Notes: a model not told the origin generated them from the sequence alone. A DNA stretch of 64,000 nt from Bugula neritina (GCA_964035545.1 OZ037765.1:13650698-13714697), one strand, 5' to 3'. Positions 6,018 to 64,000 are shown, counted from the stretch's first letter. Numbers and translations: made by a program.

Positions 6018-7019
6018 ATTTCCTATAGAATAAATGGATATATAAACTACTGCTTGGTACTATTGCTAACCAATACTTATAGACAGTTAGAGTACCCAGA
6101 AAAATTGAGCAGCGTCTAAAAATATTAGGCTACTAGAGATAGTTGTCAGCTTAGCTACCAGCAACATTGATATATTGTGAAATTGTTAGGACTGCCATAA
6201 TAGTTATATACTTCTTAATGAAACACTCACTCCTTACTAGAAATTTTACACTTTTTAATATTTAAAAAATGTTTTTAATTTTGAAAATATTCTCAAGAAC
6301 CAGAATCAATAACAATAGCTGAGAAGGCAAACAGAGTGAAACAAACATTAACTTTAGGTTAAAGTTTACAGAACCTCTGACATACTTTATCTATGCAGTA
6401 ATGAAAAGTAAACACAAGCATGCACTTTGAACTTTCAAACAGAGTCAGTGTATAAAGGTGTGTTGCAAAAATAGACACAGCTGTGGCCTGCATTATCATA
6501 AACATGAAAGACTATATACAGCTAGAAAAACCAACTTTGACTAACACTAATGTGACAAAAGCAAATGTCTGGGGTAAACTAGACTCTTCATATGATACAT
6601 CAACAGAGAGTTTGTTGAACGTAAATTTTGTGTCGATGACAATAAATAGCATAGTTTACTTTCCAGGACCACAAGCCAAGAAAGAAAACAACATGAAGTT
6701 GCTGAAGAATTACACCAAACTGTCGTTTGTGATAAAAAATCAACTCATTAGTAGATGAATTTACTGACATTTTGCTTCCTTAGCATGTAAATGACTTATC
6801 TACTGAGTGGGGTCGCTGGTGTAAGACTTTCAGTGATAAATTACTAGCTATTAATCTGGTAGCTAAAACTGAAACTGCAGGGAGACGCAAAATAGCTTTG
6901 TTTTGACACATAAGGGGTGAAAATGTTTGTTAGCTGTATGGTCAGCTAGAGTTCTTCAACGAAGATGGTACTACAGAAATAAATGAGGGCACAGATTCTG
7001 CTTGCGTATCAAAGACCAT

Positions 7020-8370
7020 AAAACAATGGCACATAGACTTTGGCCACATGAACTACACTGACATATGCCAGCTAGCACAACAGGTATGCAAATCCTGCAA
7101 TCCAGCAAACTCTGCACAAGCTCCACATGTCAGACCAATAAATTGGGACAGCAAACTAAATCTCAAGATGAATCCCAACTACATGCTACAAAACCATTAC
7201 AACGTGCACACACGGATTTACCAGGTCCTATCTCTCCTATTTCACGTAAGGTCACAAATTCATCATAAATTTCATTGACGAATACTCAAGCATGATCTTT
7301 CAATATCTATTACGTTTTAAAGATGAAGCTTTTTCAGCCTTACAAAAGTTTTTAGCTGACGTAGTGAACATAAGCAAAGTCCATGAACCCCACAGCGATA
7401 GCGGTAGAGAAGACACCATTCAAGTTTTTCGGAACATAATCCTTCAACACGGTATAAAACACACTAGCATTGTCTCTCACTCCCCTTACCAAAATAAAAA
7501 AGCAGAGCGACCTTAGCACAGCACTTTGGAAATGGCTCGCTGCCTTATTTCAGACGCCCATTTGCTTAAAAATCTTTGGCCACATGATATTAACTGCTCT
7601 CAATACTTTTGCAATAGAAGTTATCAACAGCGAACCAAATAAACAGCCTATGACATTTTTACTCAACTCAAACCTGACATGCGAAAATTTTTAATTTTGG
7701 CTCTTAACGTCATTATCTCGACGAATCACCTCATTCTAAACTTTCCTTATGGCATAAACAAAAAAACCCACAGTTACTTCATTCTAAATGAAAATAGAAA
7801 TAAAGTTGTAACTACAAGAAACGCTATTTCAAGTCCTCGCTACTCTTCATAATTTCATGAACTAGAGGAAGACGGCAATCATCGACCAACCCTTCCTTCT
7901 AAACCTAATAATTCATCTGATGAAATAAACGAACCTACATCTAATCGTTCAGAACATTTCACTGAACAAGAACATCCCAATCATGAAAACCAATCTCCAG
8001 TCTCTGACTCACCTGAATCAGAATCAATTGCCCAATCTAAACCTCCCCGTAAACACCGCATGCCCACGAAATTTGATGATTATCTCTTCACAACATCCAT
8101 TGACTACCCATATGCAGGCATTCCCGATTTACCCAGTCCTATGAGGAGGCTGTCAACACAGTAACTCTGAAAACTTGAAAGCAGCCAAGCAAAAAGAATG
8201 ACCCGCTAGTCAAAAAAAACAAACCTGGACCGTCACTCCTTTTTCTCCTAACTGCTCAGACATGAAAGGACGCTGGATCTTTATGCTTAAACAAGGATCC
8301 AATGCCAACAAAGTCCAATACAAAACAAGACATGAGCCTGCGGTTACTCTCAGAAACCCTATATCGACTA
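7020..8370 (+). mobile_element. Ty1/Copia LTR retrotransposon relic (pre-integrase, integrase, start of RT)
   Basis: WHIDFGHMN, PLQRAHTDLPGPI, HSDSGRE, SPYQNKKAER, EMARCLI, KGRWIF; broken by stops and frameshifts. Confidence 0.85.
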
Positions 8371-8371
8371 C

Positions 8372-8742
8372 ACATTAAACAATTAAAGAAAATTGAAACT
8401 TGGTGCAATAAAAATAAATTAACTGTAAACATGAGTAAAACAAACTATATGATAATCAAAACAGCGCAAAATAAACAAGATTTAAATGGCTTTGCCTTAG
8501 AAATGTTCAACAAAAAATTAGTCGAGGTAAAATCAACTACCTTCTTAGGTATTATAATAGATTCACATCTTTCTTGGCAACAACATTGCAGTAAACTTTG
8601 TCAAAACCTAAGGCCCTTAGTAGGCTTGATAAGTAAATGTTCCCATCACCTACCTAGAAAAATTCTAATACAAATATAGAACTCTTTTGTAAATTCTAAA
8701 TTAACATATTCTCTAGAATCGTGGGGTAATACAGCAAACATT
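8372..8742 (+). mobile_element. Non-LTR (CR1/L2-group) RT C-terminal fragment
   Basis: WCNKNKLTVNMSKTNYMII, FLGIIIDSHLSWQQH, LTYSLESWG. Confidence 0.8.
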
Positions 8743-8744
8743 TG

Positions 8745-11700
8745 AAGACCTCACTGAAAGAACCATCAAAGTCACATTTTTGTCAAATTGCAGTTATCTG
8801 CACCATGCGATAGCTTGGGCATCAAAGTTTGTCATAGTAGTGCCAAACTAGCATAAAATGATCAAAGTCACATGAAAACAAGGGTTAAAATATTGCCTCA
8901 CTGTGAAAGAATGATCAGAGTCAGTCTAAACTATAATACAATGATCAGGGTCCAATGCTAACAATGATAAAGTGATCAGAGTCCAGTCATGTGATCAATA
9001 TTAGCCAATGAGATCACTTGACCTTCGTTTGTCCTATTTTGTAATGTTTTTATTTCTAATAAGCCTAGTTCAGTAGTGGTTGTTGTGTGAAGTTTTCCAA
9101 GTTAGCCAGCAAAATTCTACCATGGAAGAACACCCTGAGCAAACTGATAAGCCTAAGAAGAGACAGAAACATCTCACTAAGGCAGAAGAGGCTAAAAAAC
9201 GTAGAATAATGAGGCATAAAACTGGAGCTGATTGCCAATGTTCCAGGTTTAAATGTTTTGATAACGTGATTTCAACTGAGAGAGATATGTTGATTTCACA
9301 GTTTAATGAAGACTATAAGTCTAAAGATGAGCAGGATGCTTACTTAGCAGGTGAGTTTTTAGCCTAACATGTACTCACAATGTATGTAACCACAGCATAT
9401 TTATCTGCTTTTTGTTACCGAGTGTAACTGAAGCTTTTTCTAATTAATTACTCGTATAGTCTGTTGTATTTGTCTGATGATAACATCCTAACAAACTTGA
9501 GACTACAGAGCACATAATTTCAAAATAATTATAAGCAATACATTTTTTCTTTTTTATATATTCTGTTGGCAATGCATTAGTGAAACCATTACCATTGGGT
9601 ATTTTATGTAAATCAACATTAAATTTAATGAGAGCTTTCATTTTGGTTAATTGAAATTAATGTAGCACTGACAAGGTTATTAATGCTTTTCTACTGGTAA
9701 GTTTCAGTGGTAATACAAGTAGTAATAGAGTAGAGTTTGTTCATTTGAGTTGTGTAAAAAAGATTTCTTGGTGCAACATGCTGGGAGATTTTGCTGTTTG
9801 ACCTTGTTTAGATAATCAAATCGAAAATAGAGAAATCAGTTTCTTGAATCCCTGTATTCAAGCGCCTACTAAAAATGTAAGTTAGTTCTGAAAAATACTA
9901 GTTCAATACGCTAACTTTTACTGGCTGCAGGATTGAATTCAGTGCAAGATGTAGCTAGACGGCGGTTCAGAAAAGATGATGTGGATGAAAAAACCCCCCA
10001 CAACTACTCATACATTTACAGTGTGCGTGTTATGAGAGAGGGCACATTAAACACTATACGCGTATGCTTCGGGCATTTCAGTCTCTCTTGGATATCAACA
10101 ACCGTCGACTGCAGACCATAAAGCATTCTCTTGCGACCACCGGTAGGTTGTGAATGATCAATTATAAGACTAAGGAAGCAAGGTTTGTCTAATAATATAA
10201 ATTACATTACATAAATGAGTGAAAGTCAGCAAGACTGAGGTTAATAAATTTGGTACAAATAGGTTTCAACTAATAGTAATGATTACTGGTGCATTTGGTG
10301 AGGCACTCTGTTTTTACATTGATGTCGTAGTAACAGCCGCTGCTAGGAAGTGATCATTGCTTAATTTCATGAAGTGACAGAACTCTTTATTGAATCTATG
10401 TTGTAGGCAAAGCACCAACTGACGAACGTGGTCATCACTCCAACTACTCACATAAACTGCCAGCAGAAACTGAAGCGTTAGTCTGTCAGCACATTGAATC
10501 ATTGAAAGGACAAAAGGCTCACTACAATGTGCATAAGAGTAAGCGGCTGTATCTACCGAAACATTAAATCAGGCAAAATTGTTCGAGTTGTTAAGAGAGC
10601 AGCATTCTGATGCAAAGTGTTCGAAAGAGACCTACCGTAAAATACTAACTACGATGTACAACATAGCATTTGGGTATCTACGATCTGAAACCTGTTAAGC
10701 ATGCAACGAGTTTTTAGCTTCCAAGCGCACTTTAGATGCCAAGCTAAAAGACGACCCCCTCAATTCGCAACTTCTTGAAGAGTGTCGAAGCCTGGAGACT
10801 AAGAAAGCTGTTTATCTGAGTAAGGCTGAAGTATTTTATGAGCGAAAGAGACAGGCAAAGCTGAAAGCTAGGCAAGATGGACGTATGTGGCAATCTGCAT
10901 GGATTACCAGAAAAATTTGCCGTGTCCAAACATAACAAATGACGTGTATTACATGCGACAACTTACATGCATTTCGTTTGACATTCATAATCTTGCACCT
11001 AACAACGCTACATTTTGTGTATATGATGAAACTGGCTAAAAAGGGTGCAGATGATGTGTGCTCTATATTGTCACATTTTGTAAAAACGTTATTCCCGTTA
11101 GTTGCAATGCTACATATCTTTTGTGACTCCTGCGCAGGGCAGAATAAGAACTGGACAGTCATCCGCTTCTGTCATTACTTGGTAAATGTGGTCAAGCAGT
11201 TTCGTGAGCTACAACTCACATTCCCTATTCGTGGCCATTCATACATGGAGTGACAAGAATTTTGGGGCTGTCAATCAAAAACATCCAGCTGAGGTATCCA
11301 AAGAATGGTGGTCTGAATTTCGAGCATGCAGAAAATCTCCCGGCCTTATTCTGTAGTTGAAATGGAGCAGGATATGTTATACAATATATCTGACTGTTCC
11401 CAACCCGATCAGCACGAGAGACAGTACTTCGGCAGGCACTCTCAAAATCGGTAATGCACCTTGATTCGTGGAATGGGCAATGGAAAGTTAGTCAAGTAAC
11501 AAAAAAGAAAGGGCAGTGTGCCTCCCTAAAAAGAAGCCGCTATATTTAGAACGTCTACCAATCTTACAAGATAAATATGACATTCAGCACTTGAGGAAGT
11601 TTTGTGGACCGGAGGCTAAAGTGTTATTCGATGAGTTGAAATCTGACAGTCAGCTGCACGATGAGCTCCAAGAGGAGATTAATCCTAAATAATGACTTGG

Positions 11701-13179: not shown

Positions 13180-14220
13180 TCATTATTTTATGAACATGAT
13201 TTATGCACAAGATTTTTCCTAAAGCAAGAGACTTCAAATCTGTCAAAGGTACTGAAGAAAAACGCTTTCATGTCTAGAAGCATGTAATTCTTACAATAAA
13301 TGAGTTGTTAAAAAATTACAGAAATACATATTATGAAGACAAAAGGGATCGATCAAAATTAGCATTTTCAGATCGCAGCACTGCATAACTGAAGGACACA
13401 GATACATTCAATGTTGGTTTGTACAGTGCATATTACTTTTAAATTCATAATCAGTACAATTCCTGCACTTACTACGGTCATTTTATGATCTAATGGATTA
13501 GGTTGTATGTAACGCAAAGTCAAAACTTTACAAGGTTCACCAAAGTTCAAACTGCTAGGATAGAATTCTGTAATCCGCTATCTTGAATTATTTTGTGATA
13601 AAGATAATTTGAAACATTTTGCAGAGACTTTATAATGCAACCAGTGGATGACCACATATTGTACAACTCTACACAAACCAATTAATACATTCCCAGAGAA
13701 TTGTCAACTTGCTTGCAGGAAATCTCGACAAGCTGACAGCTCACCATTATGTTGCAAAGAGTGAACGTATCTCAATAAAGAGAATGAAAATTTTCTTGAA
13801 GATGAAGCCATCCTCATTTTTAACTTCACAGAATATCATAGCGTCATTATAAAAGATGAGGAACAGGGGTTTCACTAGGAGAAATCTTAAACTGCTCAAC
13901 ATCTCTTTAGGGCTTATTTTCCTAAGATGAGAAAGTTAAACCTTACTGTGTGCGTGAAGTAAGCAATTGCTTACAACATTCACAAATCACATAAAAAATA
14001 AATATTCCTACTTGAAAACAGTATTTCTTTCATGGAGCAGCTTCGAAATATGAGTTATAAAAAATTTGTAATCTTTTGTGATATAAAGATGATTTTGAGC
14101 TTCATGTAGAATGGAATCTCTTAGAACCAGTCATGGCAAGAATGCTTGTGATGGTGTAGATGGTGCAAATAAAAAAAAATCTGCTAAAGCAAGTCTGCCA
14201 AGACCAAACATCAAGACATT
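13180..14220 (+). mobile_element. Sola2-like transposase relic
   Basis: HSMLVCTVH, FNFTEYHSVIIKDEEQGFH (degenerate DFAENY...Q.FHW), EWNLL..SHGKNACDGVDG. Confidence 0.7.
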
Positions 14221-14479
14221 TGGTTACTATGTGTAAGAATTAGAAGCTGACGAGAAAAACTTTATGGCCTAACTAATTAGAAGAATGCGTAGGTGAGAGA
14301 GAGAAAATAGAAGAAACTCTTGATGATATAATATCTTTGCATAGCTACCCAAGTATTCCTTCTCCAAAGAGTATTGCAGGTGAAAATGGGAATGTAGCAC
14401 CAAGTTTCAACGCTGAGCATTCAGCAACAAGTAATAGGCAGTCGTTGGGCAGCAACGTGAGTGATCTACACGTCTTTGA

Positions 14480-15720
14480 GAAATCCATAACAAACGCTGT
14501 GCATGTGAATTATCTCCTCATACCTGAACTGCTGGTGTCTGCAGGTAACTCTCTTGAGTATGCAGATGGGAGATTTCCCTTAGAACTCTTGTATAAAGAA
14601 CAAATATTCCTGAAAGTGACTAAATTGAATATTTGAAAAAGTATGTAGAAATCTTTGTAAGGAAAGCAATTAATGGATATAGCCTACTAAATTCTGATGG
14701 TGCATATTACAAAACATAGGAGATTTTATGAGAATGATTTGGTTTTAGTTATACAGGAGCTGAATCTTTCAGAACAAAATTGAATAGTTGGCCTAAAATC
14801 AAACCTCGCGACAGACTTGCTATTCAGAAATAATAAAAATTTTTGTGCCAATATGAAGCTGCTATGCTCAAATTTAATGAATCGAAGATTCTCAATGATT
14901 CGCAGCAAAACAAATGCATGGAAACTTTCTGAGTGGATGTCAAGTAGTTGGAAAAGAAAGGCAGGTCAATTTAGGAAAGCAGATAGTAGTTAACCAAATT
15001 TTGGCTTGTTTGCAGAATTTGTTGAAATTAAACCAGACATTATTGATTTTGTGAAAGGTAGTGCTGAACACACTGATAGATTGGATGCCAAAAAATACAA
15101 ACAGGCACCAGTTCTAATAAACCAGTCGCCCATACACGTTCAATTTCATTCAGATCAAGCAAGCAACATATATTTTGCTACATGAGTAACCGCGTAATTG
15201 GTGAATGCTTATCTTTGCCAAGCTGCCATTACATGAAAAAACCAGTATATAGGTAAACATAGCCTTTGTTTTCAATGTCACAAAACAAACCACACCAAAG
15301 CACAATGCATTAGACCATGCATTTACAAGAAATGTCAAGATAAACACCCTACTAGCACTCATTATGGAAGTACACATAGCAATTCAGGCGACAGTGAAAA
15401 AATTCAGTCTGATGTTGGATGGTGTAACCATAATGATGGTCATGGTCAAGATTACTAGTAAAAGCAGTGTACCCAATGACAAAGAAAATGCAACTCCCAA
15501 CTTAGACAGTGCTGAGAATGCAAGCAACTGTTTTAGTACTATAATTCTGGCCTAAGTTTCTATATAGTGCTGGTCTGGTTGTCTGACACAAATGCACCCG
15601 AAAAAGAAATCTTGGTTTATGAAATGTTTGATACTATGTCTTACACTAACTTTGTTACAACAGAAGTAGCTAATCAGTTAAATGCACTTGGACTCAGACA
15701 TGCTAAACCGGCAGCCTTGT
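14480..15720 (+). mobile_element. BEL/Pao LTR retrotransposon gag-protease relic
   Basis: LIPELLVSAGNSLEYAD, YLKKYV, SFRTKLNSWPKIKPRD...FLCQYEAAM...ILND, CQDKHPTSTH, VYEMFDTMS (protease-like). Confidence 0.7.
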
Positions 15721-15981
15721 GACTTTTAGCGGCCTTTTGAGTTGGTAAATATGGCATTTGGATCTATTATTAAAATGAAAGATTGGTTCAGCTTCAACCC
15801 TTTCTGAATTGTGCTCCTTACTAAGGCAGCCAAAACTGCGAACCCTACAATTCTGGCATTCCCAAGTTTATTAAATGAATAATGACTGGCAAACTTGAAA
15901 AATAACCCCATTTTTCATCATTATGCTTAGTTGATCATTAGCTGCCTATTAGTATTATTTGATTAGTAACCAAGTGGTCAG

Positions 15982-17891
15982 CATGAGCAAACGACAGGAA
16001 CTGTAGCGCAAAAGAAGTCACCTAAATGATGCTGAGACAAAGGAACTCCTGATGGTACCTCTTTTTTTAGGCGGGAAGCTTTGTGCTGAATGCAGCAGTA
16101 CAGTAAAAACCAAGGAACGATGCAATGCTAAGTCTCACTATGAGGTAAAACATGGCCAAACATACAATCAAGAAAACCCAGATATTAAGAAGGAAAAAGT
16201 GGCCTCTTTGATGAATAGCCATCAGAAGCAAGAATCAATGATGAGAAGGCCGGCAGATGAAAACAAGAGAGCACTGCTAGGTGGTTCTAAGATAAGAGTA
16301 TCTCATAAACAAAAGAGGAAAATTTTGTAAGCTAAGTTTCAATTTTTAGATTTACATGTATTTTATTACTGTAAATCTTTCAGCAAATTCTATTCCAACT
16401 CAAATCCTGAAACAAAGTTTATACTTACAAGATCCATTCTCAATTTCCTATGTAAACCTGGTCAAATTATTAAGGGATGCATTGAAATTGCAGCGAATAC
16501 CATCTGAGATAGTGAGCAAGCCAAACAGGTTTTTCAGAAAATCTTCCTGTCACGACTTACAATAACTCGTCAAACTGAGCAGTTGAATATGAATATCTAG
16601 ACACAATTGGAAAACAGAGTGAAGGAATTTGTAGCTTACTCCATAGCACTCAATGGGTGAACTGATAAGAGTGGACACAGATAAACTGAAAAATTTCATT
16701 AGAGGTGTAAAAAAATCACATAGTCATTGAGAATTTCATATCTGTTTGACACATGAAGGACACCGCTACAGGTAAAGATATTTACAAGGAGGTCATGGCC
16801 ACCATAGAAACTAGAAATTTGATTCTCAAACAACTCAGTGCTATTATAAAAGATGGAGAACCATCTATGAATAATGTTAGGAATTGCTTCACCACCTTGT
16901 TTCTTGACAAGACAAAATATAAGGACATCAGTCCTTCAACTTCGGCATTTCATTGCTGTATCCATCAGAAGAATCTTGCAGCCAACATTCTTTGGGGTGT
17001 GAAAAAACTGCCAGCTACATCAGTCCAAGAGGTCTGAAACATCAACAATTCCGACAATTTCTTGGTAAATTACAAGTAGTATATGAAGATATTCTGTATT
17101 TTGCAAGAGCGCAAGGATATTTAAAGGGAAAGATGGTGGGAAGACCATAAAAGCTCCAAACAGATTCTTAACTTTTGTGAATGTCATGGGAGAGATCTAC
17201 CTGAGTTCAGAGATCCAGCAATTTCTCAAGGAATTGGCATTCCGTTTTGACATACTCACTCATCTCAAGAACCTAGATACAAAACTGCAAGGCAAGGACA
17301 AGCAAATGTCTGACCTGCATCACTATGTGGGTGGATTTGGTGAAATGTTTGAGCGTTGGATATAAGAGGCAGATAGTTGCTATGTTGACCCATAGAGCTT
17401 TTCCTCACTGGCAGGATGTCCTAGGGAAAATCAGGACATAGGGAAAATCCGATAATTATTGATCGTTATGAAAAATTTGACAAGAACTGAAGGGTAAGTT
17501 TGAGAATAGATGCATGAACTTCAAAAACAGCAAGGACAACATCACTGCTTTTTCAGCAATACTCCAACTCAAGGCGTCTGGTCACCTGCAAAATGAAGTC
17601 ATTCGGCTGAAAAATGATCTAGTTTAGACTCCTCTCATGGCACCTGACCAAGACCTGCTCAATATATACCCATGCCTACCCCCAACCTACTACCCAAGGA
17701 CAAGGAGTTTTGCTGGCAGACTTCTCAACATGTTTGCTAGCACATATCGATGCAAACAGTTATTCTCTTTCAAATTAGGATCGATACTAACAGACTCGCA
17801 TCTGGCCTGAACATTTCATATAATTGCATCAGACATTGAACGAAAATATCAAACCATAAATTGCTCCGTTCAATGCCAACACTTCCATTGA
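15982..17891 (+). mobile_element. hAT transposase relic (GTF2IRD2/SPIN-like)
   Basis: BED-like CAEC...HYEVKH, MKDTATGKDIY, DGEPSM, FHCCIHQKNL, RGLKHQQFRQFL, MFASTYRCKQLFS. Confidence 0.85.
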
Positions 17892-28400: not shown

Positions 28401-28429
28401 ATATATGGCAACACTAAACCAGAGGATGC

Positions 28430-38340: not shown

Positions 38341-38364
38341 TCTCTTAGTTGACATCACTTAAGA

Positions 38365-43200: not shown

Positions 43201-43227
43201 CTAGCATGAGGTTATAAATATATATAT

Positions 43228-49689: not shown

Positions 49690-49841
49690 CTAAACACAAC
49701 AAGCACAACTTGCCAAATAATTATTTTTTTCTACATGGCTGTGTCTTGGCTAATATTTTCCATTCAACTTTGTAGTTGATGTGACAATCTTTCAATTTTA
49801 AGTATGATTTTTATCAGCTTTTAATCTCATTTTCTGTTAAC

Positions 49842-53511: not shown

Positions 53512-54733
53512 CACGACGGTCAGTCAATAAGTAGTGGAAATTTTGTTATAACTCTTTATTAGAATAAGATAGAGCTTTATATTTTTTTCGCTTTTCAACA
53601 TAATCCCCTTCTTTTTCTATGCACTTGTTTCACCTTCCCACAAGGTTCTCAAGTCCTGCAGAATAACAGAATAGGATTTCTGGCGGCTGAATTCTGAGCC
53701 AGTTTCACACAGCTCCAATGACCGCTGCATCAGTAGTGAAGTGCTTGCTTCACATGTGGCTCTTTAAAGGTCCAAAAAGATGGAAACAACTTGGTGCTTA
53801 ATCTGGACTATAAAAGGATGATGTAATAACACCTCCCAACCCAGTTTTTCAATTTTGCCCATTGTTCATGCAGCAGTATGTGGGCGAGCATTGTCCTGGT
53901 GGAACACGACACCTTTAATCTGGAGGCCTCTTCTCTAGCTTCTTATGTTTTGCGTAATCACAGTCAAAACCTCACAGTAGTTTTCAGAGTTCACAGTGTT
54001 ACATTGGCTCTTGAAATCCAAAGTTATAGGACTTTTTTATCCCAAAATACTGTGAGCATTACATTCCGTGTTGTCCTCTTTGACTTAAACTTCTTTACAG
54101 GAGAGGCTGTTTGCTTCCACTCTAATTATTGTCTTTTTCATTCCGGTTTGTAATGATACACCCAGGTTTCATCTGTGATTATAATCCTAGATAGGAAAGC
54201 ATTCCCTTCCCGCCTAAGTCTTCTCGTGCATTCTCTGGCAGCCATAAGACGCTGCGCTTTGTGCACATCAGTCAACATTTTGGGTACCCAGAGTGCGCTG
54301 ACTTTGTTGAAGGCTAGCTCCTCATGGACAATATTGTGTGAAATGTCCTAGGTCTCAGCAACATCATCAATAGTTAGTCTTCTATCAGATTTAATCGGCT
54401 TTTTCACTTTTACTACTGTGTCAGAAACTAAAACATCCACTGGCCTACTATTTCCTGGCTCATCAGTAATGTCTTCGCCCATTCTTAAATTCATGAACAC
54501 ACCTATAGCTTGTTTATGATATAGAGTTTTCCCCATATTGTTCTTCCATTCTTCTGTGTATAACACTTGCTCTGACACCCTCAGCTGTCAAAAATATGAT
54601 AACAGCTCTTTGCTCTGGGAGCGTGCATTTTTTCAGCTTGGCGGCCACTCTGTGTCCATTGTATATATTATATTGGTTCAAATTGTGCATTGATATGTCA
54701 ACTGCGAATAACAGAACTGTGAGTGCCCTTGTA
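53512..54733 (-). mobile_element. Mariner (DD34D) element, near full length and decayed
   Basis: EQRAVIIFL, SDRRLTID, WVPKML, TDETWVYHY, FHQDNARPH, YSPD*APSCFHLFGPLK, GDYVEK; degenerate ends cacgacggtc... and ...cccttgta. Confidence 0.88.
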
Positions 54734-54789
54734 GATGATGTGGACATACTAGGTTTGCCGAGCTTCAATACAAAGTTGTACTTCATAAC

Positions 54790-56880
54790 TGTGTCTCTGT
54801 CAGGAGCTTCAGAAAAATAAAATATAAGCCTCTAGATTTTTTTTTGAAAAAAAGTGCATTCAATGTTCAGTTCTTAGACTCTTTAAATCTACCCGACATA
54901 AAATTGCTCACGTTTTTTCGGATATTTCATACTTCATTAAAACATATTCTCCTATGCAGTAAGTATCTTCTTGCCTAACAGTTTTTTGCTCATCTAGCTT
55001 TTTGTTGGCACTTTCTGAACTTGTGTCAAATGACACGGTGTCATCATCACTACCGCTAATTTCATTTGCAGTCTCAATCTCTTGTTCGATTTGCATACTT
55101 TTTTTCTTTGATTGAATTTCTTCTGTTTCTCGTGCTCCTTTAGTTTCTCTGGTTCTAGGGTGTCAGTATTGCTGACTGCTCTGTTCTCTTTTGCATTGGT
55201 TTCTTTGGCTCAGCTTGCGGTAGAGGGATTATATCACTATGTACCCTTATATGTGGTGTTTCAACTAAATATTGTTCTATTCTAGCTAACGTTGAAGGGG
55301 TGGCTGGGTTGTGAGTTTCAGTAGACAAAAAGCTCACAGCGTCAGCGAACATATCGTTCGCAGCATCTGTAATGGAATAAGGTAAGAAATTATGTTCCGG
55401 AAAAATAGAATCGTTAAATGGAAATATTTCGGTTTGAAATCCTACTAAAAGTTAGTAGTTGTCATCGCCTTTAAAAAGGCTTGCCCAACGGAGCTACCAT
55501 CTCATAAACTATCATTCACCTTTCTTGGTTCATTCTCATCTAGTTATCACATGCTTCATTGAAGTAAAAAAATTTTAGTCCATATATGCTGCCGTCCAGC
55601 CGCTGCATTCTATGTGAAGGAAGTGTTAGTATGACAAGAGGAAAAAGAGACAAAGAGAAACTTGAGTCATGGTTATCCATAATTATTAAAACAGGCTTTT
55701 CTTTCAACAGTTTGGCAAGCTTTATGAAGGACGATAGAAGGTCTCTACTAAATATATGCAAGTTCATTCATACAGATTTTGCTGCTACTCCCTTAGTTTA
55801 TGGCGGTGCTCTATTCATAAAAATATCTTTCATTTTGGCTCTAGGAAAGATTGAGTTTTTGATAATTCACCGCGCTCAGATGTTACCAAAGCGATCTGTT
55901 TCTTTTGGTGCTCAGCACCTTGATGGTATTTTTTCTCACTTATCTCCACTTTGTCTTGTTCGGGTAGATATTTTTGCTGTAGTAAAGTCATACTCGTCAA
56001 TGTTGTATATCTCAGTGAGTGAAAACTTGTACCTCATACAAAAAAGCATGTATATTACCTGTTTTTTCATCATGAAATGCTAACTTAAAATATACTTTTC
56101 AAAATTCTGCAAGTCTCCAAAACATCAATTTTGGACAACCAGTTGTTCTGGCTTTCTTGAATATGCTTCACCATTTGCTCTCCATTAATTGAACGCTATT
56201 GTTTTGCTCACCTACTTCTCCATTACATTTTAAGCTTGTCGAAAAATCTTTTTAACAGTGGTTGGGTTACAGCCTGCTTTGCTAATGAAGTGGCTTTCGG
56301 TTTTCGACGTGCCAAGTGGTGCCTTTGTTTCAAACATTTTAGCCAGTTTACACCTAATTGTAGCAAAGATGTTGAACAATGATTAAATATTACAGCATGT
56401 CTACTAGAGTTTGATGTTTTTCTACTGGTATACATTTTGTTTTCACTATTTCCGGTGATTGCTTGTTAGCCAGACGAAGGATGATATTTAATTAACTTAT
56501 AGGCCTACCTGCAGTTTTATTGAGTGTCCAGCTAGTTGATAGAATGATTTTGTTAGCCTTAGCAAACTCATACGCAAGATCACGGACTTCCTTGTGTGTT
56601 AGACCATGAAAAGTATCATCAAGGTTTTTTACATGTTTAGCCAACTCCAGTTCCATGACACAGAAAATATGGTAGCCTTTAGTTAGCAATTTGAGTACCC
56701 AAACATCTTTCTCTTTGAAGGGCTACATTTCCAAAATCTCTAATATGCTTCTTGACATGCATTGCAGGGAAACTACTGACTTGGCTGGTTTTTGCTCTCT
56801 TTCAGCAAGCTTCACCGCTTTATTCAATGTATCAAGATTTGCAGTTCTTGTGGTTTATCATTAATGCTTCCCTGGCATTA
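54790..56880 (-). mobile_element. Pogo/Fot1-like (CENP-B HTH plus DDE_1) transposase relic
   Basis: FHGLTHKEVRDLAYEFAKAN, WLKCLKQRH..RKPKATSLA, IYNIDE, PVLIIMDNHDS, SHRMQRLDGSIYG, SAILTP. Confidence 0.8.
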
Positions 56881-57493
56881 ATGAGATAAATTATATCATC
56901 AAGATACTGACAGTACAATGTGACTGAGCTTTTTTCTACCTGATTTGTACCTCTCCTCTGCTTTATCTGCAGTGCCTGCTGGTGCAGCTTTACTGTCATC
57001 ACAATATCTGAATAGGTCCTTGGCTATACGTAGGTGTTTTAACTTGAAGTTCCAAATGCTGTAGTTAGATGAAAAGGGTTTGTCTACTAGAAATTTGTTC
57101 TTTCATCATTAAATGTGCTTATTGGAGTAATCGTGGGCGCATAACCTGTTTTATAATCTTATGAAATCAGTAGATTTATTTAATTTTCACCACCAATAAT
57201 CAAACAACGGCAAAACCACAAAAACAAGAGGTGGAAAAAGTATCATGGTAGAAGTATCATGTGACTATGTGCACAACGTGCAGACAATTCTTAAAATTCA
57301 AAATTATAACGCAACATTTTTCTAACCGAGTAGTGTTTATTGGCAACAATTTTATTCTAATAAAAGAGTGTGCCCTGTAACGGTTTCAACATTGAGAATG
57401 AATTAATAAAAAATGCTTGAAATCAGAATTATCTAGCATCACATAAAATTTAAACATCAATCAGCAAATAAGTATGTATAGTATATAGTAAAT

Positions 57494-58975
57494 CAGTGGT
57501 TCCAACCTTTTTCATACCATTCCCCCCTTTCATGGACTTTTACTAATAATTCCCCCCTCTTTTTGAAAAGCAATTTATATGTACATTAAAAGACTAAAAT
57601 AGCGTATAATACAAGTCTATATTTGTTCTATTATATTTGATTATAATATATAGTGATTGTAATAATAGTATATAAATATATTAAACACAAGAGCATTCCA
57701 ATTGTCAGTGTGATGCCTGCAACTGATGTTTTTGTGCCAGCTTGCTTATGTCTGGCTCGGTTGTAGACAGGGCACATCTCAGGTCACTCTGCAGATCAAG
57801 GCAGTTTCTTTTTCATTTTTGATAGTCAACATGGATGAAAATCCCACTTCACATAAATAAGTGGTGCTGAATGGCACCAAAACTGTTAGTGCTTTTTCAG
57901 CTATTTGTGGATGCATTTTACTTGCAGACACCCAAAATTTCTCAACTGGCAAAGATTTAAACTCATCTTTCAATGCAGGATTGTTAATCAGCTCAATGAA
58001 GTCCTCCTGCAACTCTTCTGGAATTTCTTCAACAGAGCGCTGAAATGGATTGCGTGTTAAGTCAATAATTTTTTCCTTTTCTGGGGGTAACTCTTGAAAA
58101 TACCGTTCAAACTCTGCTAATAGTTCACTAAGATGCTCAGAGATGTTTTTATTGAAAGGCTTTGGAACAGGTTCATTTGCTAATAGTTCATTGAGTGTGG
58201 AGAAAGACACCATATTTTTCACAAGATCGCGAGTCTGCCTCAACTTTAGTTTCGCCTTGAAAGCATTGATGCTGCTATGAAAAGCAATGACATGATTGCA
58301 TCCTTGCATTCGTAAATTCAGGTTGTTTAGTGCAGCAAATATATCTACCAAGTAAGCCGTACATAGTTCAAATAAATTAGCTTGCATAGCTGCTAAAAGT
58401 TCCTGTTGGTTTTTACTTTCAAGAAATTTTTTGACTTCCATTCGCAGCTCAAAGAGCCGAGCTAGCATGTTTCCTTTGGATAACCATCTTACTTCAGTAT
58501 GAAAAAGCAAAGTGGTGAATGCAGCGTCACTCTCATGACAAAGGGCTGAAAACAGTAGTTTAGTGCTGAAGCCTTGATGTAATTCACAATTTTGATGTTT
58601 GTTGCTAAGTTAGATTTCATTGCCTGTGGTAGTGTTCTTGAAGCAAGTGCCTCACGGTGAATAAAGCAATGCACACCATCTATGTCAGGATTTTCCTTCC
58701 TTGCCAGCTCTACAAATCCTGGTCTTGATCTCAGCATGGCTGGAGCTCCATCTGTACATACACTAATTACATTTTTCCACATAAGCCCAGTTCTCTCAAA
58801 GTATTGGTCAACAAGCTTCATCACATCTACAACTGATGTTGTTGTAAGTAAGGGCTGACAAAACATAAACTCTTCTTCTATAGATTTGCCGTGCACGTAC
58901 TTACTGTACACTATTAGTTGAGAAATATTAGCTACATCAGTGGACTCGTCAAGTTGTATGGAGAAGAATGGCGAC
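57494..58975 (-). mobile_element. hAT Buster/Charlie (ZBED5/ZBED8-like) element: 3' half and right terminus
   Basis: FSIQLDESTD, CTDGAPAM, HCFIHREALAS, FHTEVRWLSKG, PFSTTYLCEVGFS, ending QASH*; terminus CAGTGGTTCCAACCTTTT at 57494. Confidence 0.9.
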
Positions 58976-59045
58976 TAAGATAAGATAGTGTCTTCTTATT
59001 TATGGAGTCAGCAGAAAGAGAATTTAGTTCTACAAGGCCATGCAA

Positions 59046-59300
59046 CTATTTCACTAAAAAGCTGTTGGGTTTCCTAACCTGAATCTTGTACAGTTTCCAA
59101 GTCTGAGAACCGTTTAGTAGGGTGGTCAGAACAATAGCTCCGTACACTTGACTTTTCACTCTGATTGTTGCATTAATTTTGTTACAGAGTTTCTCTCCTA
59201 GTCTCCCAAATGCGACTGAAGCTTTACAAATCCTTGTTTGCAGTTGAGTGTCTAGCCTTCCACCGTGGGTAATTGTGCTGCCAGGTATGTAAACCAGCTT
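59046..59300 (-). mobile_element. RTE-clade LINE fragment
   Basis: RICKASVAFGRL...KSQVYGAIVLTTLLNGSQTW; paralogous to 61200-61390. Confidence 0.8.
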
Positions 59301-60240
59301 CTGTTTAGACTGTCCAGTGAGTTTTAGACAATGCCGTTTCATGTGTGGTCCCCCACACCTAAAACACTCTAACCTACGTCCTGAAGATTTTGTAGACGAG
59401 TGGGTTACGCCCACAATTTCCTAGAATATTGCTCTAAGACCCAAGAAATAAATCAGTCACTGTTTAGTGTTGACTTCCATCTGTTGCATCATTTGCATCA
59501 TGAGATTTTCCATGTTGCTAGAAGTTTAAATTGCAGAAGTTGTAAAACAACTTTTACTGCTCTTTCCAACATCAAGGTATGCTTATGTAGCTTTGACAGT
59601 GTTAGACACGGATTCAATTTGCAGCAACATTAGATGTCTTCTCAAAGCATTATGCTTCAAAGCTCTCATAAAAGCATCTATGGCAATAGTATCTTTAGAC
59701 TGAGTCAATGTCTAGGTAACCAATCTAGGCTGGCCGCTCTACTTCCGAGCCAAGAACATAGAGAGAACTATTCTGTTCATATTTTAATAGTTGGTATATC
59801 TTAGTGGTGGTACAGTTTGTCACGGGCACACCTGGTGTTCATACCAAACCTGCTTTGCAGTGTCTTTTAAACTAGCTAAAGGATACTCCCTCTGTTACAA
59901 TCCATTGCTGCCTTTTTCACAGCACACTTAAAGTGTAACGGCTGCTGTATCTGTCCACACATTAGCCTCCTTGTTTTCTTGAAATTGCTGGAGATATAAC
60001 TCAACATTTTGTGAGCCATCAACTTTCTGCAATTTGAAGTTATCTCTTCTACTCCCACCCACTTGTAGTAAGTCAACCAATATGTTCAACGGATCTCCAC
60101 ACACTGGAGATGGGATCTGTTGACATCCACTATGAGCAGGCATTATTATGAGAGAAATGCAGAGTAAAAATAGAAATATTCAATTTGAAAAAACAGCAAA
60201 CAACTTATCTTCAATAGCTGGTCCCTCTGCTGCCGCCACT
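59300..60240 (-). mobile_element. Gypsy gag relic with PBS
   Basis: PBS TGGCGGCAGC next to ...TTTACA; FKLQKVDGSQNVELYLQQFQENKEANVW; zinc knuckle CFRCGGPHMKRHC. Confidence 0.7.
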
Positions 60241-60899
60241 GTAAAGCATTTTTACTGTAGTCGACTGATCCAATGTTGAAGCTACACAACTACTTGTGGG
60301 TGTTATTGTGGTAAGTCTATGACTACTGTTTTAACAAGGATGACCTGCCAAATACAGTATCAACTGGAGACAAAATGAGAAGAGTGCAGCTTACAATGTA
60401 AAACTGGCTATGACTAGGATACGCAGTTACAGACCAGGCAACAGCAAGAAATAATGACTACACTGCAACCAATGACTACACTGAGATTAGCAGTGTAAGT
60501 TATTGTCAACCTTACCCAAATTATGAAAGCGATGAGCAGTTATAATTAGACAACCTCTAATAAACCGAATATTAATACAGGGAGATTTTATATCTGAGTT
60601 TTTTGTTACCACACTTTTTTTACTGTTGTATATCAATAATGCAAAACAAAGCTTACTCGTTTAAAATTATTGTATTTGGTACTTATCAGAAAAATTCGAC
60701 TGATCTCAACGAACTGAAACTAAAAACTAATTCTCACCGCACGCAGGCTTAAAGCTAACTTTCGCACTGTTAGTCTCCAAACAAAACAACAAATTTAAAT
60801 GGTAAAAGTCAGAATGACAACAAATACTTTTTAATCAAAACTTTATAATTACTGAAAATAAACTATAAAATGTAACTCACTCACTAAGCAGTCAGTCTT

Positions 60900-62960
60900 T
60901 CAACTGACTGACAATGAATCAACTTTTCCACAGGGTTCTGTTTTGCGCCAAGTTGTATAAATTGTTGACATCAATGCTCTTCACTTTGAGGTGTCTCTTT
61001 AACTTAAGGTATCCTCAATTTCTATGGCCAGACACCAGCTAGGAGAATAGCGTCTGCTTGGGTAGTCAATGTTCATCCATACACGCAATGTGACTCGCCC
61101 ATTTAAGGTTGCAAATTATTACTTAATCATATATTGGTGCTAACTTTGCACGTTGAAGAATTTCAGTGTTGGGGATTTTTTGCCACCATTTAACTTTCAT
61201 GGTGGACCCTAGCTGCTTCATCATAAAGCTGTTGAGTTGTCCAACTTTGTACAGCATCCAAGTCTCAGAGCCGTAAAGTAGGGTGGTCAGAACAATAGCC
61301 TTGTAGACTTGACATTTTACTCTGATTGTCACATCATTGTTGTTCCAGAGTTTTTCTCTCAATCTCCCAAATGCAACTAAAGCTTTACACATTCTAATTC
61401 TAATATGCTTACATTCTCGAGCGGGTTGTCTTTAATTTGCATATTGCACATGACCTCTGTTTTACACATATTTATACACAATCCAAAATCATGGGCAGCT
61501 TTAGCAAATCGTGATGTAGCCACTTGCATATCTTCCAAGCTGCATGCTATTAGTGCTGTGTCATTTGCCTACATCAATTCACGAAACGTAGTCAATTGTG
61601 TACGACTCTTGGAACTGTAAAGAGCGGGGTTGAATAGATTAGCACCAGGTCTGGTTTGCAGATACATACTTTGGGTGGTGTCGAATAATGCTTTGTCATG
61701 TACCGCCGTGAGGTATATTCTAAATAATGTAGGTGCGTGAGCACAGCCTTGCTTTACTCCATTATTGGTATCAAATTGTGGTCACAGCTGGCTTTTGCTC
61801 GATATATGTGCTTCCTTCCCAATATGGAACTGTCGGATCAGCTTAATCAAGTGTGATGAGATACCACATCTTCCAAAGATGATCCACAGTGTCTCTCTGC
61901 TAACAGTGTCAAAGGCTTTGGTGAAGTCTATGAACACAGCATACAAAGGTCTCTACTGTTCTCCACATTTTTCTTGTATTTGATTTAATGTGAAAATCAT
62001 ATCCACTTTGCTTCAAAACCACATTGGGTTTTTGGCAGAATAATAGTTTCAACTGAAAAATTTATCAAGTTGAACAGAGTTCTTGCCATGACTTTACCAG
62101 GGATTAATAGCAGTGATATACCTTGATAGTTGCCACAGTCACGTCGATCACCTTACTTAAATATAGTTATCATGGCAGCGTCCCTCCAGTCTTTAGGAAT
62201 TGTCCTACTTCTCCAAGCTCTACATATGATTCCCCACAATGCCTCTTTCAGAAGTGTGCCGTCTTGCTTTAATATTTCACCAGGAATATCATCCTTGCCG
62301 GGTGCTTTGTTGTTAGCCAGTGCTCTAATTGCATTGTCCACTTCTAGGAAGTTAGGTTCTGCCTCCAATTCATGAGCAGTTGGTATGCTTTTGTTTCTGG
62401 TGATGACTTCCACTGAAACAGCACCGGTCTCATTGAGAAGATCATTGAAATGTTCTGCCCATCTGTTTAAGATATATTTTTCCTCTGTCAGGATGGTTCC
62501 ATCTTTAGCATTGATTTAGATTGTGTGTCTGGTGGTGACGCCCCAAACTTCTTTCAGGCTGTTATAGAAAGCTCTGGTGTTTGTGTCAGCAAGTAGTTGT
62601 CTTTGTTCCACTTTGGATTTCCACCAGGCGGTTTTCAGTTCTATGGTTTTTAGTTTGAGTCAATGACAAGCTTCACGGTGTGCAGCTTTATTAGCACGAG
62701 TTGCCCTACTAGAGAGTAGCTTATCCCGAGTCTTGTTCCTATCTGCCAAAGCTGCTGAAATTCAAGATCGTTTTCGTCGAACCAGTTTTGATGCTTGCGT
62801 TTTGTTTGTTCCAAGTGTAGCCAATGACACACCTGGTAATGTGTTGCGTAGTTTGCACCAGGTGGTCTCAACACTACTGTCTATGATCACTTTTGTCTCC
62901 TTAAGCTCTTTGGTTATTGCATTATCAAGTTGGGCACTTGAGACTGTTGAGATTTATCTG
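60900..62960 (-). mobile_element. RTE (BovB-like) LINE ORF relic
   Basis: HQNWFDEND, NKAPGKDDIPGEILK, NYQGISLL, FIDFTKAFDTVSR, NGVKQGC, YKAIVLTTLLYGSETW. Confidence 0.9.
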
Positions 62961-64000
62961 CCACCATCTGTGACTTAGATTATATAAAAAAAATCCATCA
63001 CATTATCCTTCAACATGACATTCAGATCTTGCAATAAGTAGGCTACTTGAATGCCTAGTCTTGGAGGTACATTTTTGGTGCACTATTTAATCAAATGTTG
63101 AAGTTATACTGCAGCTCTTCATTTTTTGAAAAGCTCGTTTGCAGTGGGTCAAAATAGAAAATTTCTTTTTCAAATCCAAGGTGCTTTGATACCGACTAAA
63201 TCATAGTTTACGTTTATTGCTTTGTTTAGCTGAAGACTAAATTTTCCCTTTGGTTAACAGCTGAAACTACCTATTGCTTGATGTCAAAAGATACATTAAC
63301 ATAATGTACTAACAATTAAATATTATTTAGATGATCTGCCTGATATCGTTGGCTTTCTCATTACTGTGGACTGTGCAAATCATGTCACTCACTGCTGGCT
63401 TTATCAATGGTGAGGAGTTATTTTTGCTGAGCAGCTTGCCAAATGGTGTCTGGGATCAAGTATAGCATATTTCAAGCTATTGTTTTTTCACCAAAAGTAT
63501 TTATCTCTTTACATGTATGCCCAAAATCTTCAGTTTATTTTTATTGTTTACAAGCTTCCTAATTTTCAATTGTACTCGTATATTACTGATCACTTCAGCA
63601 TAGAGCACATTGAAGCTTTGAGATGCCATGACTCTCAATTGTAGTAAAATCAATATCAGGAAATTTATCTTTGTAGCAATATTCTTTGATTTACAAATTG
63701 ACCATAAGTTTGAATAGCACCTTGACTAACATACCCCTATACACTTTTTGCTAAAAACAAATTAAAAACCTACAACACCTATGATGAAATTTTATCAAAA
63801 CAAGAAATCAAAAGTTCAAAACAACCATTTGTGAAGATATATCAAACTGTAATACAACAAAATGCATAGAATATCAATAAAATAGAAAAACTTATACCTT
63901 TGCTAAGTCAACAAGCAGTTCACTAAAATATTTTACCAAAGAGTTGTACCCAGCATCTCATACTATACACACTTTGCCTGGTTTTTTTACTGCCCGAGTA

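What the first reader, a model, noticed from the sequence alone, without database searches (positions are those of the whole stretch)
7000..63000. Near-perfect TE orientation polarity: candidate bidirectional antisense TE-trap (piRNA-cluster-like) locus
Seen: all 17 TE pieces I could orient between ~7 and 38.3 kb are on +. These are Copia, three short LINE fragments, Sola1, Academ-like, three Sola2, BEL, hAT, Crypton, a PLE hammerhead, two Gypsy gag relics, the long LINE and Rex1. From 38.4 kb on, everything is on - except one hAT at 41.2-43.2 kb: PLE, a gag-like relic, Gypsy, Rex1, a PLE hammerhead, Sola2, two hATs, mariner, pogo, two RTE pieces and Gypsy gag. The same families (Rex1, Sola2, hAT, Gypsy, PLE hammerhead) flip with position, so the bias is a property of the locus rather than of a family, and it includes cut-and-paste DNA transposons. 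Seventeen same-strand pieces is about 1 in 65,000 under a naive coin-flip model, although the pieces are not fully independent and the switch point was chosen after the fact. Known: uni-strand piRNA clusters such as Drosophila flamenco accumulate TE fragments antisense to transcription, and divergent clusters have a central promoter. Inference: transcription diverging from a ~36-43 kb zone would read almost every fragment antisense, forming a TE-memory library.
Basis: partly seen in the sequence, partly recalled or inferred. Interest (0 to 1): 0.85.

Follow-up and report, generated by a model that had tools for sequence, protein, structure and literature searches.

The report
Two-armed one-strand transposon pile
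A 57-kb pile of about 25 dead transposon pieces really does point one way in its left half and the other way in its right half, which is the layout of a two-armed piRNA source locus, but no RNA data could be obtained to show that it makes piRNAs.

Summary
Window 6.4-64 kb is an isolated, nested transposon (TE) island of at least ten superfamilies. It lies between two genes that point away from it.

I could orient 25 separate pieces using Pfam, tblastn, ORF-to-ORF blastp, open reading frames in genomic paralogs, and motif reading. All 13 pieces from 6.9 to 38.34 kb are on +. From 40.4 to 63 kb, 11 are on - and one hAT (41.5-43.2 kb) is on +. One switch point fits 24 of 25 pieces. Chance gives 23 of 24 or better about 6e-5 of the time, even with the switch chosen after the fact.

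hAT, Rex1-like and Sola-like elements occur in both arms on opposite strands. The arms are not an inverted duplication, and no element is split as an inversion would leave it. The two "PLE hammerheads", the PLE and the Academ-like piece were not confirmed.

The genome encodes a PIWI-clade protein. Pieces range from 69 to 96% identity to their paralogs, so the bias has persisted over time.

The scan has already flagged at least ten similar one-strand TE piles elsewhere in this genome. I read this locus as a candidate bidirectional unistrand piRNA cluster, a new member of a known kind, with confidence about 0.5.

The parts
3194..4622 (-). Left flanking host gene: a dual-specificity phosphatase (DUSP3-like). 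Exons lie at about 3.19-3.42, 3.85-4.13 and about 4.5-4.6 kb. It points away from the island.
   Evidence: Pfam DSPc E=3.8e-8. Active-site exon and N-terminal exon read.
6934..8200 (+). Copia-like integrase fragment
   Evidence: gag_pre-integrs and rve. 82% identity to a copy on C1.
8266..8676 (+). LINE reverse-transcriptase C-terminal fragment
   Evidence: RVT_1 E=1.7e-4.
9077..11700 (+).
   Evidence: DUF7869 E=5e-9. ORF series read.
13995..14206 (+). Short fragment of the Sola-like family
   Evidence: tblastn, 15 HSPs, weak.
14237..15687 (+). BEL/Pao-like gag piece with a CCHC knuckle
   Evidence: Paralogs carry this frame inside open frames of 1601-1984 aa. 76% nucleotide identity.
15700..18001 (+). 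hAT transposon fragment
   Evidence: blastp to the minus-strand hAT at 58.5-59.0 kb, E=2e-5. Family copies at 76-78% identity.
19488..21600 (+). Crypton-like (tyrosine recombinase) fragment
   Evidence: Atlas leads are all tyrosine-recombinase families. Diverged paralogs are open in this frame.
23817..25723 (+). Sola-like transposase copy
   Evidence: tblastn 449 bits. 84-89% identity to paralogs.
28409..35750 (+). Long LINE, split by two nested insertions. One is a Sola-like element at 28,971-32,867 with a 461-aa ORF (93-94% identity to a C5 copy). The other is a Rex1-like LINE at 33,810-34,875. All three are on +.
   Evidence: The pieces are contiguous in paralogs on C3, C4 and C9. RVT_1 E=1e-8. 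tblastn 476 bits.
36680..38341 (+). LTR-retrotransposon gag relic, the last + piece before the switch
   Evidence: Paralog frames of 443-1220 aa. Boundaries.
38404..38955 (.). High-copy repeat of about 585 bp that opens the right arm. Elsewhere it forms inverted pairs. Its orientation was not determined. The stretch 38,956-40,380 has no scored repeat.
   Evidence: At least 35 copies at 72-74% identity. Inverted pairs in L030 and L031. AT skew flips here.
40380..41281 (-). Unclassified element, the first orientable minus-strand piece
   Evidence: At least 17 paralogs hold this frame open for 250-373 aa. The overlapping + frame has stops in nearly all paralogs.
41534..43227 (+). hAT fragment, the single exception in the right arm
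   Evidence: Paralogs carry this frame in open frames of 514-541 aa. 86% identity to a C1 copy.
43228..49700 (-). Gypsy-like element (integrase, RNase H, RT, protease, gag). It is interrupted by a Rex1-like LINE at 45,627-47,202, also on -.
   Evidence: RT_RNaseH_2 E=3.5e-29, RVT_1 E=4.5e-29, protease and Integrase_H2C2. The LINE RT is 50% identical to the left-arm + RT. 87-96% identity to paralogs.
50275..51018 (-). Sola-like fragment
   Evidence: tblastn, 35 HSPs.
52452..53172 (-). hAT C-terminal fragment
   Evidence: Paralog frames of 679 and 690 aa.
54351..54831 (-). mariner N-terminal fragment
   Evidence: Helix-turn-helix motifs read. Paralogs are open but short. Weaker support than the other pieces.
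55543..56722 (-). pogo/Tigger-like fragment
   Evidence: Paralog frames of 665-689 aa. The 171-aa + ORF over it has 4 stops in its only paralog.
57483..58976 (-). hAT fragment (ORFs of 276 and 161 aa)
   Evidence: blastp to the left-arm + hAT. 94% identity to a C1 copy.
59049..62957 (-). Two separate RTE-like LINE pieces (59.05-59.42 and 60.9-62.96 kb) with a gag-like relic at 59.9-60.2 kb between them
   Evidence: The two C-terminal regions are 65% identical to each other on the same strand. RT motifs read.

Best explanation
Window 6.4-64 kb is a transposon trap built from two unistrand arms set back to back. This is the layout called a bidirectional piRNA cluster.

Proposed mechanism, inferred rather than shown:
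- RNA polymerase II starts in the 38.36-40.4 kb zone and runs outward.
- It reads the minus strand through the left arm and the plus strand through the right arm, so nearly every captured fragment is read antisense.
- The long precursors are cut into PIWI-bound piRNAs that can target sense transcripts of related active elements.
- New insertions land in either orientation. Those that add antisense sequence are kept. Sense insertions bring their own polyadenylation and splice signals into the precursor and are lost. Over time this yields the polarity seen.

Shown here: the island, the nesting, the polarity, the switch, the mixed ages and a PIWI-clade gene.

Inferred: transcription, its direction, piRNA production and the selection step.
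For: - 24 of 25 orientable pieces fit one switch. The chance of 23 or more of 24 fitting is about 6e-5 with a free switch point.
- The bias covers LTR elements, LINEs and five kinds of cut-and-paste or recombinase elements (hAT, mariner, pogo, Sola-like, Crypton-like). Ordinary antisense bias in introns is much weaker and affects mainly retroelements (from my own knowledge, not checked here).
- The same families sit on opposite strands in the two arms, so the bias belongs to the locus.
- Insertions are nested element inside element, always co-oriented.
- Identity to the nearest paralogs runs from 69 to 96% in both arms, so the rule held for old and young insertions alike.
- The island is isolated. 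The +-100 kb flanks are gene-bearing, poor in long ORFs and mixed in strand.
- The flanking genes point outward, so outward precursors would not collide with them.
- The strand antisense to the TEs carries half as many AATAAA signals.
- A PIWI-clade gene lies at C4:9.39 Mb. Bryozoans are reported to have PIWI1 and PIWI2 (PMC11114477).
- Bidirectional clusters, defined as two divergent unistrand clusters, and the antisense content of flamenco are established (PMC4131230). A flatworm has both uni- and bidirectional clusters (PMC4604429).
- At least ten similar one-strand piles were noted elsewhere in this genome.
Against:
- No promoter-like feature, CpG island or unique conserved block marks the switch zone.
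- The AATAAA asymmetry is exactly what base composition predicts, so it adds nothing independent.
- Most pieces are only 70-89% identical to other copies. That is too diverged for efficient piRNA targeting of today's families. Only about five pieces reach 93-96%.
- The 461-aa ORF and its 94% paralog have no near-identical entry in the protein collection that includes run assemblies. This is weak negative evidence for abundant long RNA.
- The genome-wide frequency of such runs was not measured.
Confidence: 0.5

Rival explanations
1. The polarity comes from host-gene transcription, not from a piRNA function. Each arm would lie inside a very long 5' intron, or an upstream transcript, of the outward-pointing flanking gene. 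These genes are the phosphatase on the left and the channel-like gene on the right. Sense insertions would be purged because their splice and poly(A) signals break the host transcript.
For: Each arm's TEs are antisense to the nearest flanking gene. The switch at 38.4-40.4 kb is close to the midpoint between the two genes' 5' ends, about 5 kb and about 73 kb. Antisense bias of TEs inside transcription units is well established (from my own knowledge, not checked here).
Against: The phosphatase's probable first coding exon is at about 4.5-4.6 kb, just outside the island. Its other introns are only about 350-450 bp, so a 32-kb intron would be extraordinary here. No host-like exon or domain was found inside the island. 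Intronic bias elsewhere is moderate and weak for DNA transposons, whereas here it is 24 of 25.
Confidence: 0.17
2. This is a neutral TE graveyard whose polarity arose without selection on transcripts. The cause would be chance helped by mechanistic same-orientation insertion. For example, LINEs prefer the T-rich strand of already A-rich elements, which would reinforce an initial bias.
For: The sense strands here are A-rich. Target-primed reverse transcription favours T-rich nick sites, so LINE-into-LINE nesting tends to be co-oriented. Eight or so of the 25 pieces are non-LTR elements.
Against: The same polarity holds for hAT, mariner, pogo, Sola-like, Crypton-like, Copia, BEL and Gypsy pieces, which do not use that mechanism. 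The chance probability is about 6e-5 for this window. At least ten further loci of the same kind were flagged in this genome.
Confidence: 0.1
3. The flip itself is secondary. A single unistrand pile of about 57 kb would have been split by an inversion of one half, or the assembly is misjoined near 38.4 kb. This would explain the switch but not the polarity within each arm.
For: Other piles noted in this genome are one-armed and 17-35 kb long, about the size of each arm here. The switch falls at a junction between two repeats about 60 bp apart.
Against: No element is split between the switch and either outer end. The downstream flanks of the gag-relic paralogs match nowhere else in the window. 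The two gag relics on opposite strands cover the same part of gag rather than complementary halves. There is no inverted duplication.
Confidence: 0.1
4. Orientation is set at insertion by replication direction. A replication origin near 38-40 kb would send forks outward, and insertion on one template strand would be favoured.
For: The mirror symmetry about a central point is what diverging forks would give. Modest fork-direction effects on LINE insertion have been reported in human cells (from my own knowledge, not checked here).
Against: No known mechanism gives near-total bias across retroelements, cut-and-paste transposons and tyrosine-recombinase elements at once. GC skew shows no clear switch.
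Confidence: 0.03

Closest known systems
Drosophila flamenco (unistrand piRNA cluster)
   Same: Both are a dense nested mosaic of truncated TEs from many families, nearly all in one orientation, in a discrete locus next to ordinary genes (PMC4131230).
   Different: flamenco has one arm, is about 150 kb or more, is dominated by Gypsy-type LTR elements, and has a mapped promoter and piRNAs. This locus has two opposed arms of about 32 and 25 kb. About half of its content is DNA transposons, most pieces are old (70-89% identity), and nothing is known about its RNA.
Bidirectional piRNA clusters (mouse pachytene type; also seen in the flatworm Macrostomum lignano)
   Same: Both have two non-overlapping unistrand units arranged divergently about a central point (PMC4131230; PMC4604429).
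   Different: Mouse pachytene clusters are TE-poor and show no antisense TE enrichment. They are defined by small RNAs and an A-MYB-bound central promoter. Here the definition rests on TE orientation alone, and no promoter was found.
Antisense orientation bias of TEs inside host-gene introns
   Same: In both, TEs are antisense to the local direction of host transcription.
   Different: That bias is statistical, roughly 55-65% (from my own knowledge, not checked here), and affects mainly LINEs and LTR elements. Here the bias is 96% and includes cut-and-paste elements, and the island appears to lie outside the flanking genes.
Other one-strand TE piles in this same genome (scan notes s1-441661, s1-469156 and others)
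   Same: Same genome, same kind of multi-family co-oriented mosaic, similar arm length of 17-35 kb, and equally without RNA evidence.
   Different: Those are described as one-armed. This one has two arms with a sharp switch.

Membership tests
piRNA cluster (bidirectional pair of unistrand clusters) | Abundant 24-32-nt, 1U-biased, 2'-O-methylated small RNAs that map strand-specifically, to the minus strand on the left arm and the plus strand on the right | not testable with these tools
piRNA cluster (bidirectional pair of unistrand clusters) | Long single-stranded precursor transcripts diverging from a central promoter | not testable with these tools
   No RNA data. The sequence of 38.1-39.3 kb and the composition of 34-44 kb show no recognisable promoter or CpG island.
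piRNA cluster (bidirectional pair of unistrand clusters) | Dense, nested, fragmentary content from many TE families | tested here: met
   At least 25 pieces from at least 10 superfamilies in 57 kb. Nesting is shown by paralog contiguity. The flanks are far sparser.
piRNA cluster (bidirectional pair of unistrand clusters) | TE fragments co-oriented within each arm and antisense to transcription | tested here: inconclusive
   Co-orientation is met: 13 of 13 in the left arm and 11 of 12 in the right. The direction of transcription is unknown, so 'antisense' is not shown.
piRNA cluster (bidirectional pair of unistrand clusters) | PIWI-clade Argonaute encoded by the genome | tested here: met
   A Piwi-domain exon at C4:9.39 Mb matches Piwi-like protein 1 at E=1.7e-36, against 1e-17 for AGO2.
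piRNA cluster (bidirectional pair of unistrand clusters) | Content close enough to active elements to guide silencing | tested here: inconclusive
   About five pieces are 93-96% identical to other copies. Most are 69-89%. Intact copies of several of these families exist elsewhere in the genome.
Large inverted duplication / palindrome | The two arms are reverse-complement copies of each other | tested here: not met
   Self-blastn finds only microsatellite matches and one 117-bp inverted match.
Intronic TE accumulation in a host gene | Host exons flank the TE block on the same strand, so the block lies within one transcription unit | tested here: inconclusive
   No host domain was found inside the island. 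The phosphatase's first coding exon lies outside it. Non-coding 5' exons cannot be excluded without RNA.

The most novel reading that the evidence does not exclude
The polarity is not a by-product of piRNA biology. Instead it would reflect an orientation-sorting rule that acts on every class of mobile element relative to a central point. For example, insertion or retention could be tied to replication-fork direction from an origin at about 38-40 kb, or to the outward-pointing neighbour genes. The many one-strand piles in this bryozoan genome would then be a new kind of chromosomal domain.
Probability: 0.06. Interest if true: 0.8.

Novelty: new member of a known kind. Interest (0 to 1): 0.45.

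Why it matters
I found no paper describing piRNA source loci in Bryozoa. Four papers in the library contain both 'piRNA cluster' and 'bryozoa'. Of the three listed, none concerns bryozoan clusters by its title or abstract. I read one of them, and it deals with Argonaute and DICER gene families.

If small RNAs confirm this locus and its ten or more one-armed relatives, two things follow. flamenco-style antisense TE traps would be shown in a lophotrochozoan phylum. The trap would also be shown to sort cut-and-paste transposons as strictly as retroelements.

The locus also gives a ready test case. It is a compact genome with a sharply bounded 57-kb island, one clear exception and a 2-kb candidate promoter zone.

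Without RNA it remains a well-documented candidate.

Tried and rejected
I made no further attempt and did not use read laying.
- Genome background. The frequency of such runs genome-wide is therefore unmeasured.
- Pfam on single long ORFs was a poor annotator. Only about 10 of 60 ORFs of 90 aa or more matched anything. Sola-like, Crypton-like, hAT core, mariner and pogo relics all fell below threshold.
- Rfam at gathering score and at E <= 1 gave nothing. A loose hammerhead-core pattern matched once, at 47.7 kb. The hammerhead claims are rejected as unsupported.
- There are no tRNA genes.
- Inverted duplication is rejected.
- An inversion splitting an element was not found.
- Poly(A)-signal depletion beyond what composition predicts was not found.
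- No CpG island or CpG contrast was found. The whole region has CpG o/e of 0.35-0.45.
- The crude test using ORFs of 80 aa or more gives only p=0.013, because about 25 chance ORFs of that length are expected in AT-rich DNA. The homology-based tally is the better test.
- The Atlas search gave no usable hit for the ORF at 40.85-41.28 kb.
- The organism could not be named. The mitochondrial S12 gene in the flank matches only unnamed run assemblies at 100%. 'Bryozoan' rests on an earlier scan note.
- The minus-strand ORF at 12.2-12.5 kb has no paralog and is taken as a chance ORF.
- The + ORF at 53.03-53.53 kb stays unresolved. Only its first 50 residues match paralogs, and they lie over the hAT relic.

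Full report
**Setting.** The window is G000:C1:13,650,698-13,714,697 of a 216-Mb animal genome in 321 contigs. An earlier scan note calls it a bryozoan. I could not name it independently. A mitochondrial ribosomal protein S12 gene in the flank matches only unnamed run assemblies at 100% and invertebrate proteins at about 70%. I fetched 100 kb on each side.

**The island.** From about 6.4 to about 64 kb the density of long open frames and the G+C content both rise above the flanks. The flanks carry ordinary genes, few long ORFs, and mixed strands.
- On the left, a DUSP3-like phosphatase gene lies on the minus strand at 3.2-4.6 kb (Pfam DSPc). Its exons are read, including a probable first coding exon at about 4.5-4.6 kb.
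- On the right come a Harbinger-type transposase on + at 70.7-71.4 kb, a cyclic-nucleotide-gated-channel-like exon on + at 74.9 kb, and the S12 gene on - at 82 kb.
- The nearest host genes therefore point away from the island on both sides.

1. *Long ORFs and skew.* ORFs of 90 aa or more number 26 on + and 5 on - between 4 and 40 kb, against 11 on + and 21 on - between 40 and 64 kb. AT skew is positive on the left, negative on the right, and flips within 1 kb at 38.0-39.0 kb.

2. *Pfam by arm and strand.* All 350 ORFs of 50 aa or more were split by arm and strand and scanned.
   - Transposon domains appear only on + in the left arm: RVT_1 x3, rve, gag_pre-integrs and DUF7869.
   - They appear only on - in the right arm: RVT_1 x3, two RNase H families, two protease families and Integrase_H2C2.
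   - The left minus set gave nothing in 89 ORFs.
   - The right plus set gave one borderline DUF7875 hit that I did not locate.

3. *The 461-aa ORF.* The ORF at 30.2-31.5 kb has no Pfam domain. It has 99 homologues of about 650 aa. tblastn with them finds the family three times on + (13.99-14.2, 23.8-25.7 and 29.5-31.4 kb), once clearly on - (50.3-51.0 kb), and nowhere in the 200-kb flanks.

4. *Window ORFs against each other.* All-against-all blastp gives six within-arm homologous pairs, all on the same strand. It gives three cross-arm pairs, all on opposite strands. These are hAT at 16.8 kb (+) against 58.5 kb (-), and a Rex1-like RT at 33.8 kb (+) against 46.0-47.2 kb (-).

5. *Frames in genomic paralogs.* For pieces that Pfam missed, I asked which frame stays open in paralogs elsewhere in the genome.
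   - The minus frame at 40.85-41.28 kb lies in open frames of 250-373 aa in at least 17 copies. The overlapping plus ORF has stops in almost every copy.
   - The hAT C-terminus at 52.66-52.88 kb (-) lies in frames of 679 and 690 aa.
   - The pogo piece at 55.5 kb (-) lies in frames of 665-689 aa. The 171-aa plus ORF over it has four stops in its only paralog.
   - The gag relic at 37.5-37.9 kb (+) lies in frames of 443-1220 aa.
   - The CCHC gag at 15.2 kb (+) lies in frames of 1601-1984 aa.
   - The Crypton-like ORF at 19.9 kb (+) has diverged paralogs that are open in this frame. Its Atlas leads are all tyrosine-recombinase families.
   - The hAT at 42.8-43.1 kb is genuinely on +, in frames of 514-541 aa.
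   - Motif reading of the translations agrees throughout.

**Tally and chance.** I count 13 independent pieces on + from 6.9 to 38.34 kb. Next come one on - (40.4-41.3 kb), the + hAT (41.5-43.2 kb), and ten on - out to 63 kb.
- One switch between 38.36 and 40.4 kb fits 24 of 25 pieces.
- The simulation used 24 pieces with a freely chosen switch. Coin flips reach 23 of 24 in 6e-5 of trials and 24 of 24 in 2e-6.
- With the switch fixed, 13 of 13 gives a two-sided p of 2.4e-4.
- A cruder test on ORFs of 80 aa or more gives p=0.013, diluted by about 25 expected chance ORFs.

**What was not confirmed.**
- Rfam finds nothing in the window, even at E <= 1, so the two "PLE hammerheads" are unsupported.
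The repeat forms inverted pairs elsewhere. I could not orient this stretch.
- The Academ-like piece was not verified.

**Structure and age.**
- Paralog contiguity shows nesting. A long LINE (28.4-35.75 kb) is split by a 3.9-kb Sola-like element, which is 93-94% identical to a copy on C5, and by a Rex1-like LINE. All three are on +.
- The Gypsy-like element is split by a LINE that is 96% identical to a copy on C1. Both are on -.
- Identity to the nearest paralogs spans 69-96% in both arms. The orientation rule therefore applied to insertions of very different ages.
- Several families have intact copies elsewhere.

**Trivial explanations of the flip.**
- The arms are not an inverted duplication. 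Self-blastn finds only microsatellites and one 117-bp match.
- No element is split as an inversion would leave it. The flanks of three paralogs of the gag relic match nowhere else in the window. The gag relics on opposite strands cover the same part of gag.
- A misjoin cannot be excluded without reads.

**Mechanism.** The layout is that of a bidirectional piRNA cluster, meaning two unistrand clusters arranged divergently (PMC4131230), with flamenco-like antisense content.
- The genome has a PIWI-clade gene, and bryozoans are reported to have PIWI1 and PIWI2 (PMC11114477).
- Outward transcription would run the same way as both neighbouring genes. It would meet half as many AATAAA signals as inward transcription, but that asymmetry is exactly what base composition predicts.
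- Nothing in the switch zone looks like a promoter, and CpG is uniformly depleted.
- The decisive data are small RNAs, precursors and start sites. I stopped there and did not use read laying.
- Most fragments are too diverged (70-89%) to target present-day copies efficiently. If the locus is active, much of it is fossil content.

**Rivals.**
- *Long 5' introns or upstream transcripts of the flanking genes.* These would give the same geometry, and the switch lies near the midpoint between the two genes. However, the phosphatase's first coding exon is outside the island and its introns are only a few hundred bases long. No host domain lies inside the island, and a 96% bias that includes DNA transposons is far beyond known intronic bias.
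- *Chance, or LINE-specific co-oriented insertion.* This fails for the non-LINE majority.
- *An inversion.* This explains the switch only.
- *A replication-linked bias.* This has no known mechanism of the required strength.

**Context in the scan.** First-stage readers flagged at least ten other co-oriented TE piles of 17-35 kb in this same genome. One was followed up with the same outcome as here: the structure was confirmed, but no RNA was available. I did not test those loci. They make chance unlikely, but they also mean the kind of locus is not new to this scan. What is particular here is the two-armed form.

**Verdict.** The best reading is a candidate bidirectional unistrand piRNA cluster, at about 0.5, and a new member of a known kind.

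Noticed in passing
window:1-320: A repeat of about 320 bp at the window's start has at least 40 copies across the genome at 79-95% identity. Many copies are truncated to the last 110-150 bp. It looks like a SINE or MITE family.
   Followed up: no
window:18259-19135: A non-coding repeat of about 880 bp has many copies at 83-90% identity. A striking share lie on contig C8 between 0.27 and 4.4 Mb, mostly in one orientation. This could be a satellite-like or locally amplified family on that contig.
   Followed up: no
window:38404-38955: A repeat of about 585 bp has at least 35 copies at 72-74% identity. At other loci it occurs as closely spaced inverted pairs (L030, L031). These may be the arms of a foldback or Penelope-type element.
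   Followed up: partly
window:30164-31546 (+): The intact 461-aa ORF belongs to a family of proteins of about 650 aa with no Pfam domain. Most members come from unnamed metagenome or run assemblies. Named members occur in molluscs and in Cotesia wasps ('Cc8L18.2-like'). The element here is 94% identical to a copy at C5:9.667-9.672 Mb.
   Followed up: partly
G000:C2:12,874,000-12,917,200: Four tandem Argonaute-clade (AGO2-like) Piwi-domain genes lie within 43 kb. Further Piwi-domain loci are at C2:7.083 Mb and on C216. The PIWI-clade gene is at C4:9.39 Mb.
   Followed up: partly
flanks: about -44.5/-26.2 kb and -38.1/-28.4 kb relative to the window start (L006-L008): Near-identical ORF pairs recur 10-18 kb apart on the minus strand, which suggests a tandem segmental duplication in the left flank. 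Paralogous Reeler/DOMON-type exons lie on + at -9.5 kb and +89.9 kb, on either side of the island.
   Followed up: no
window:22749-22880 and 49847-49919: Two long perfect (AT)n microsatellites, of 66 and 36.5 copies, lie one in each arm.
   Followed up: no
genome-wide (paralog loci): Several families represented by relics in the island have apparently intact copies elsewhere. These are BEL/Pao-like frames of 1984 aa, pogo frames of 665-689 aa, and hAT frames of 528 and 679-690 aa. The genome therefore probably still has active transposons.
   Followed up: no
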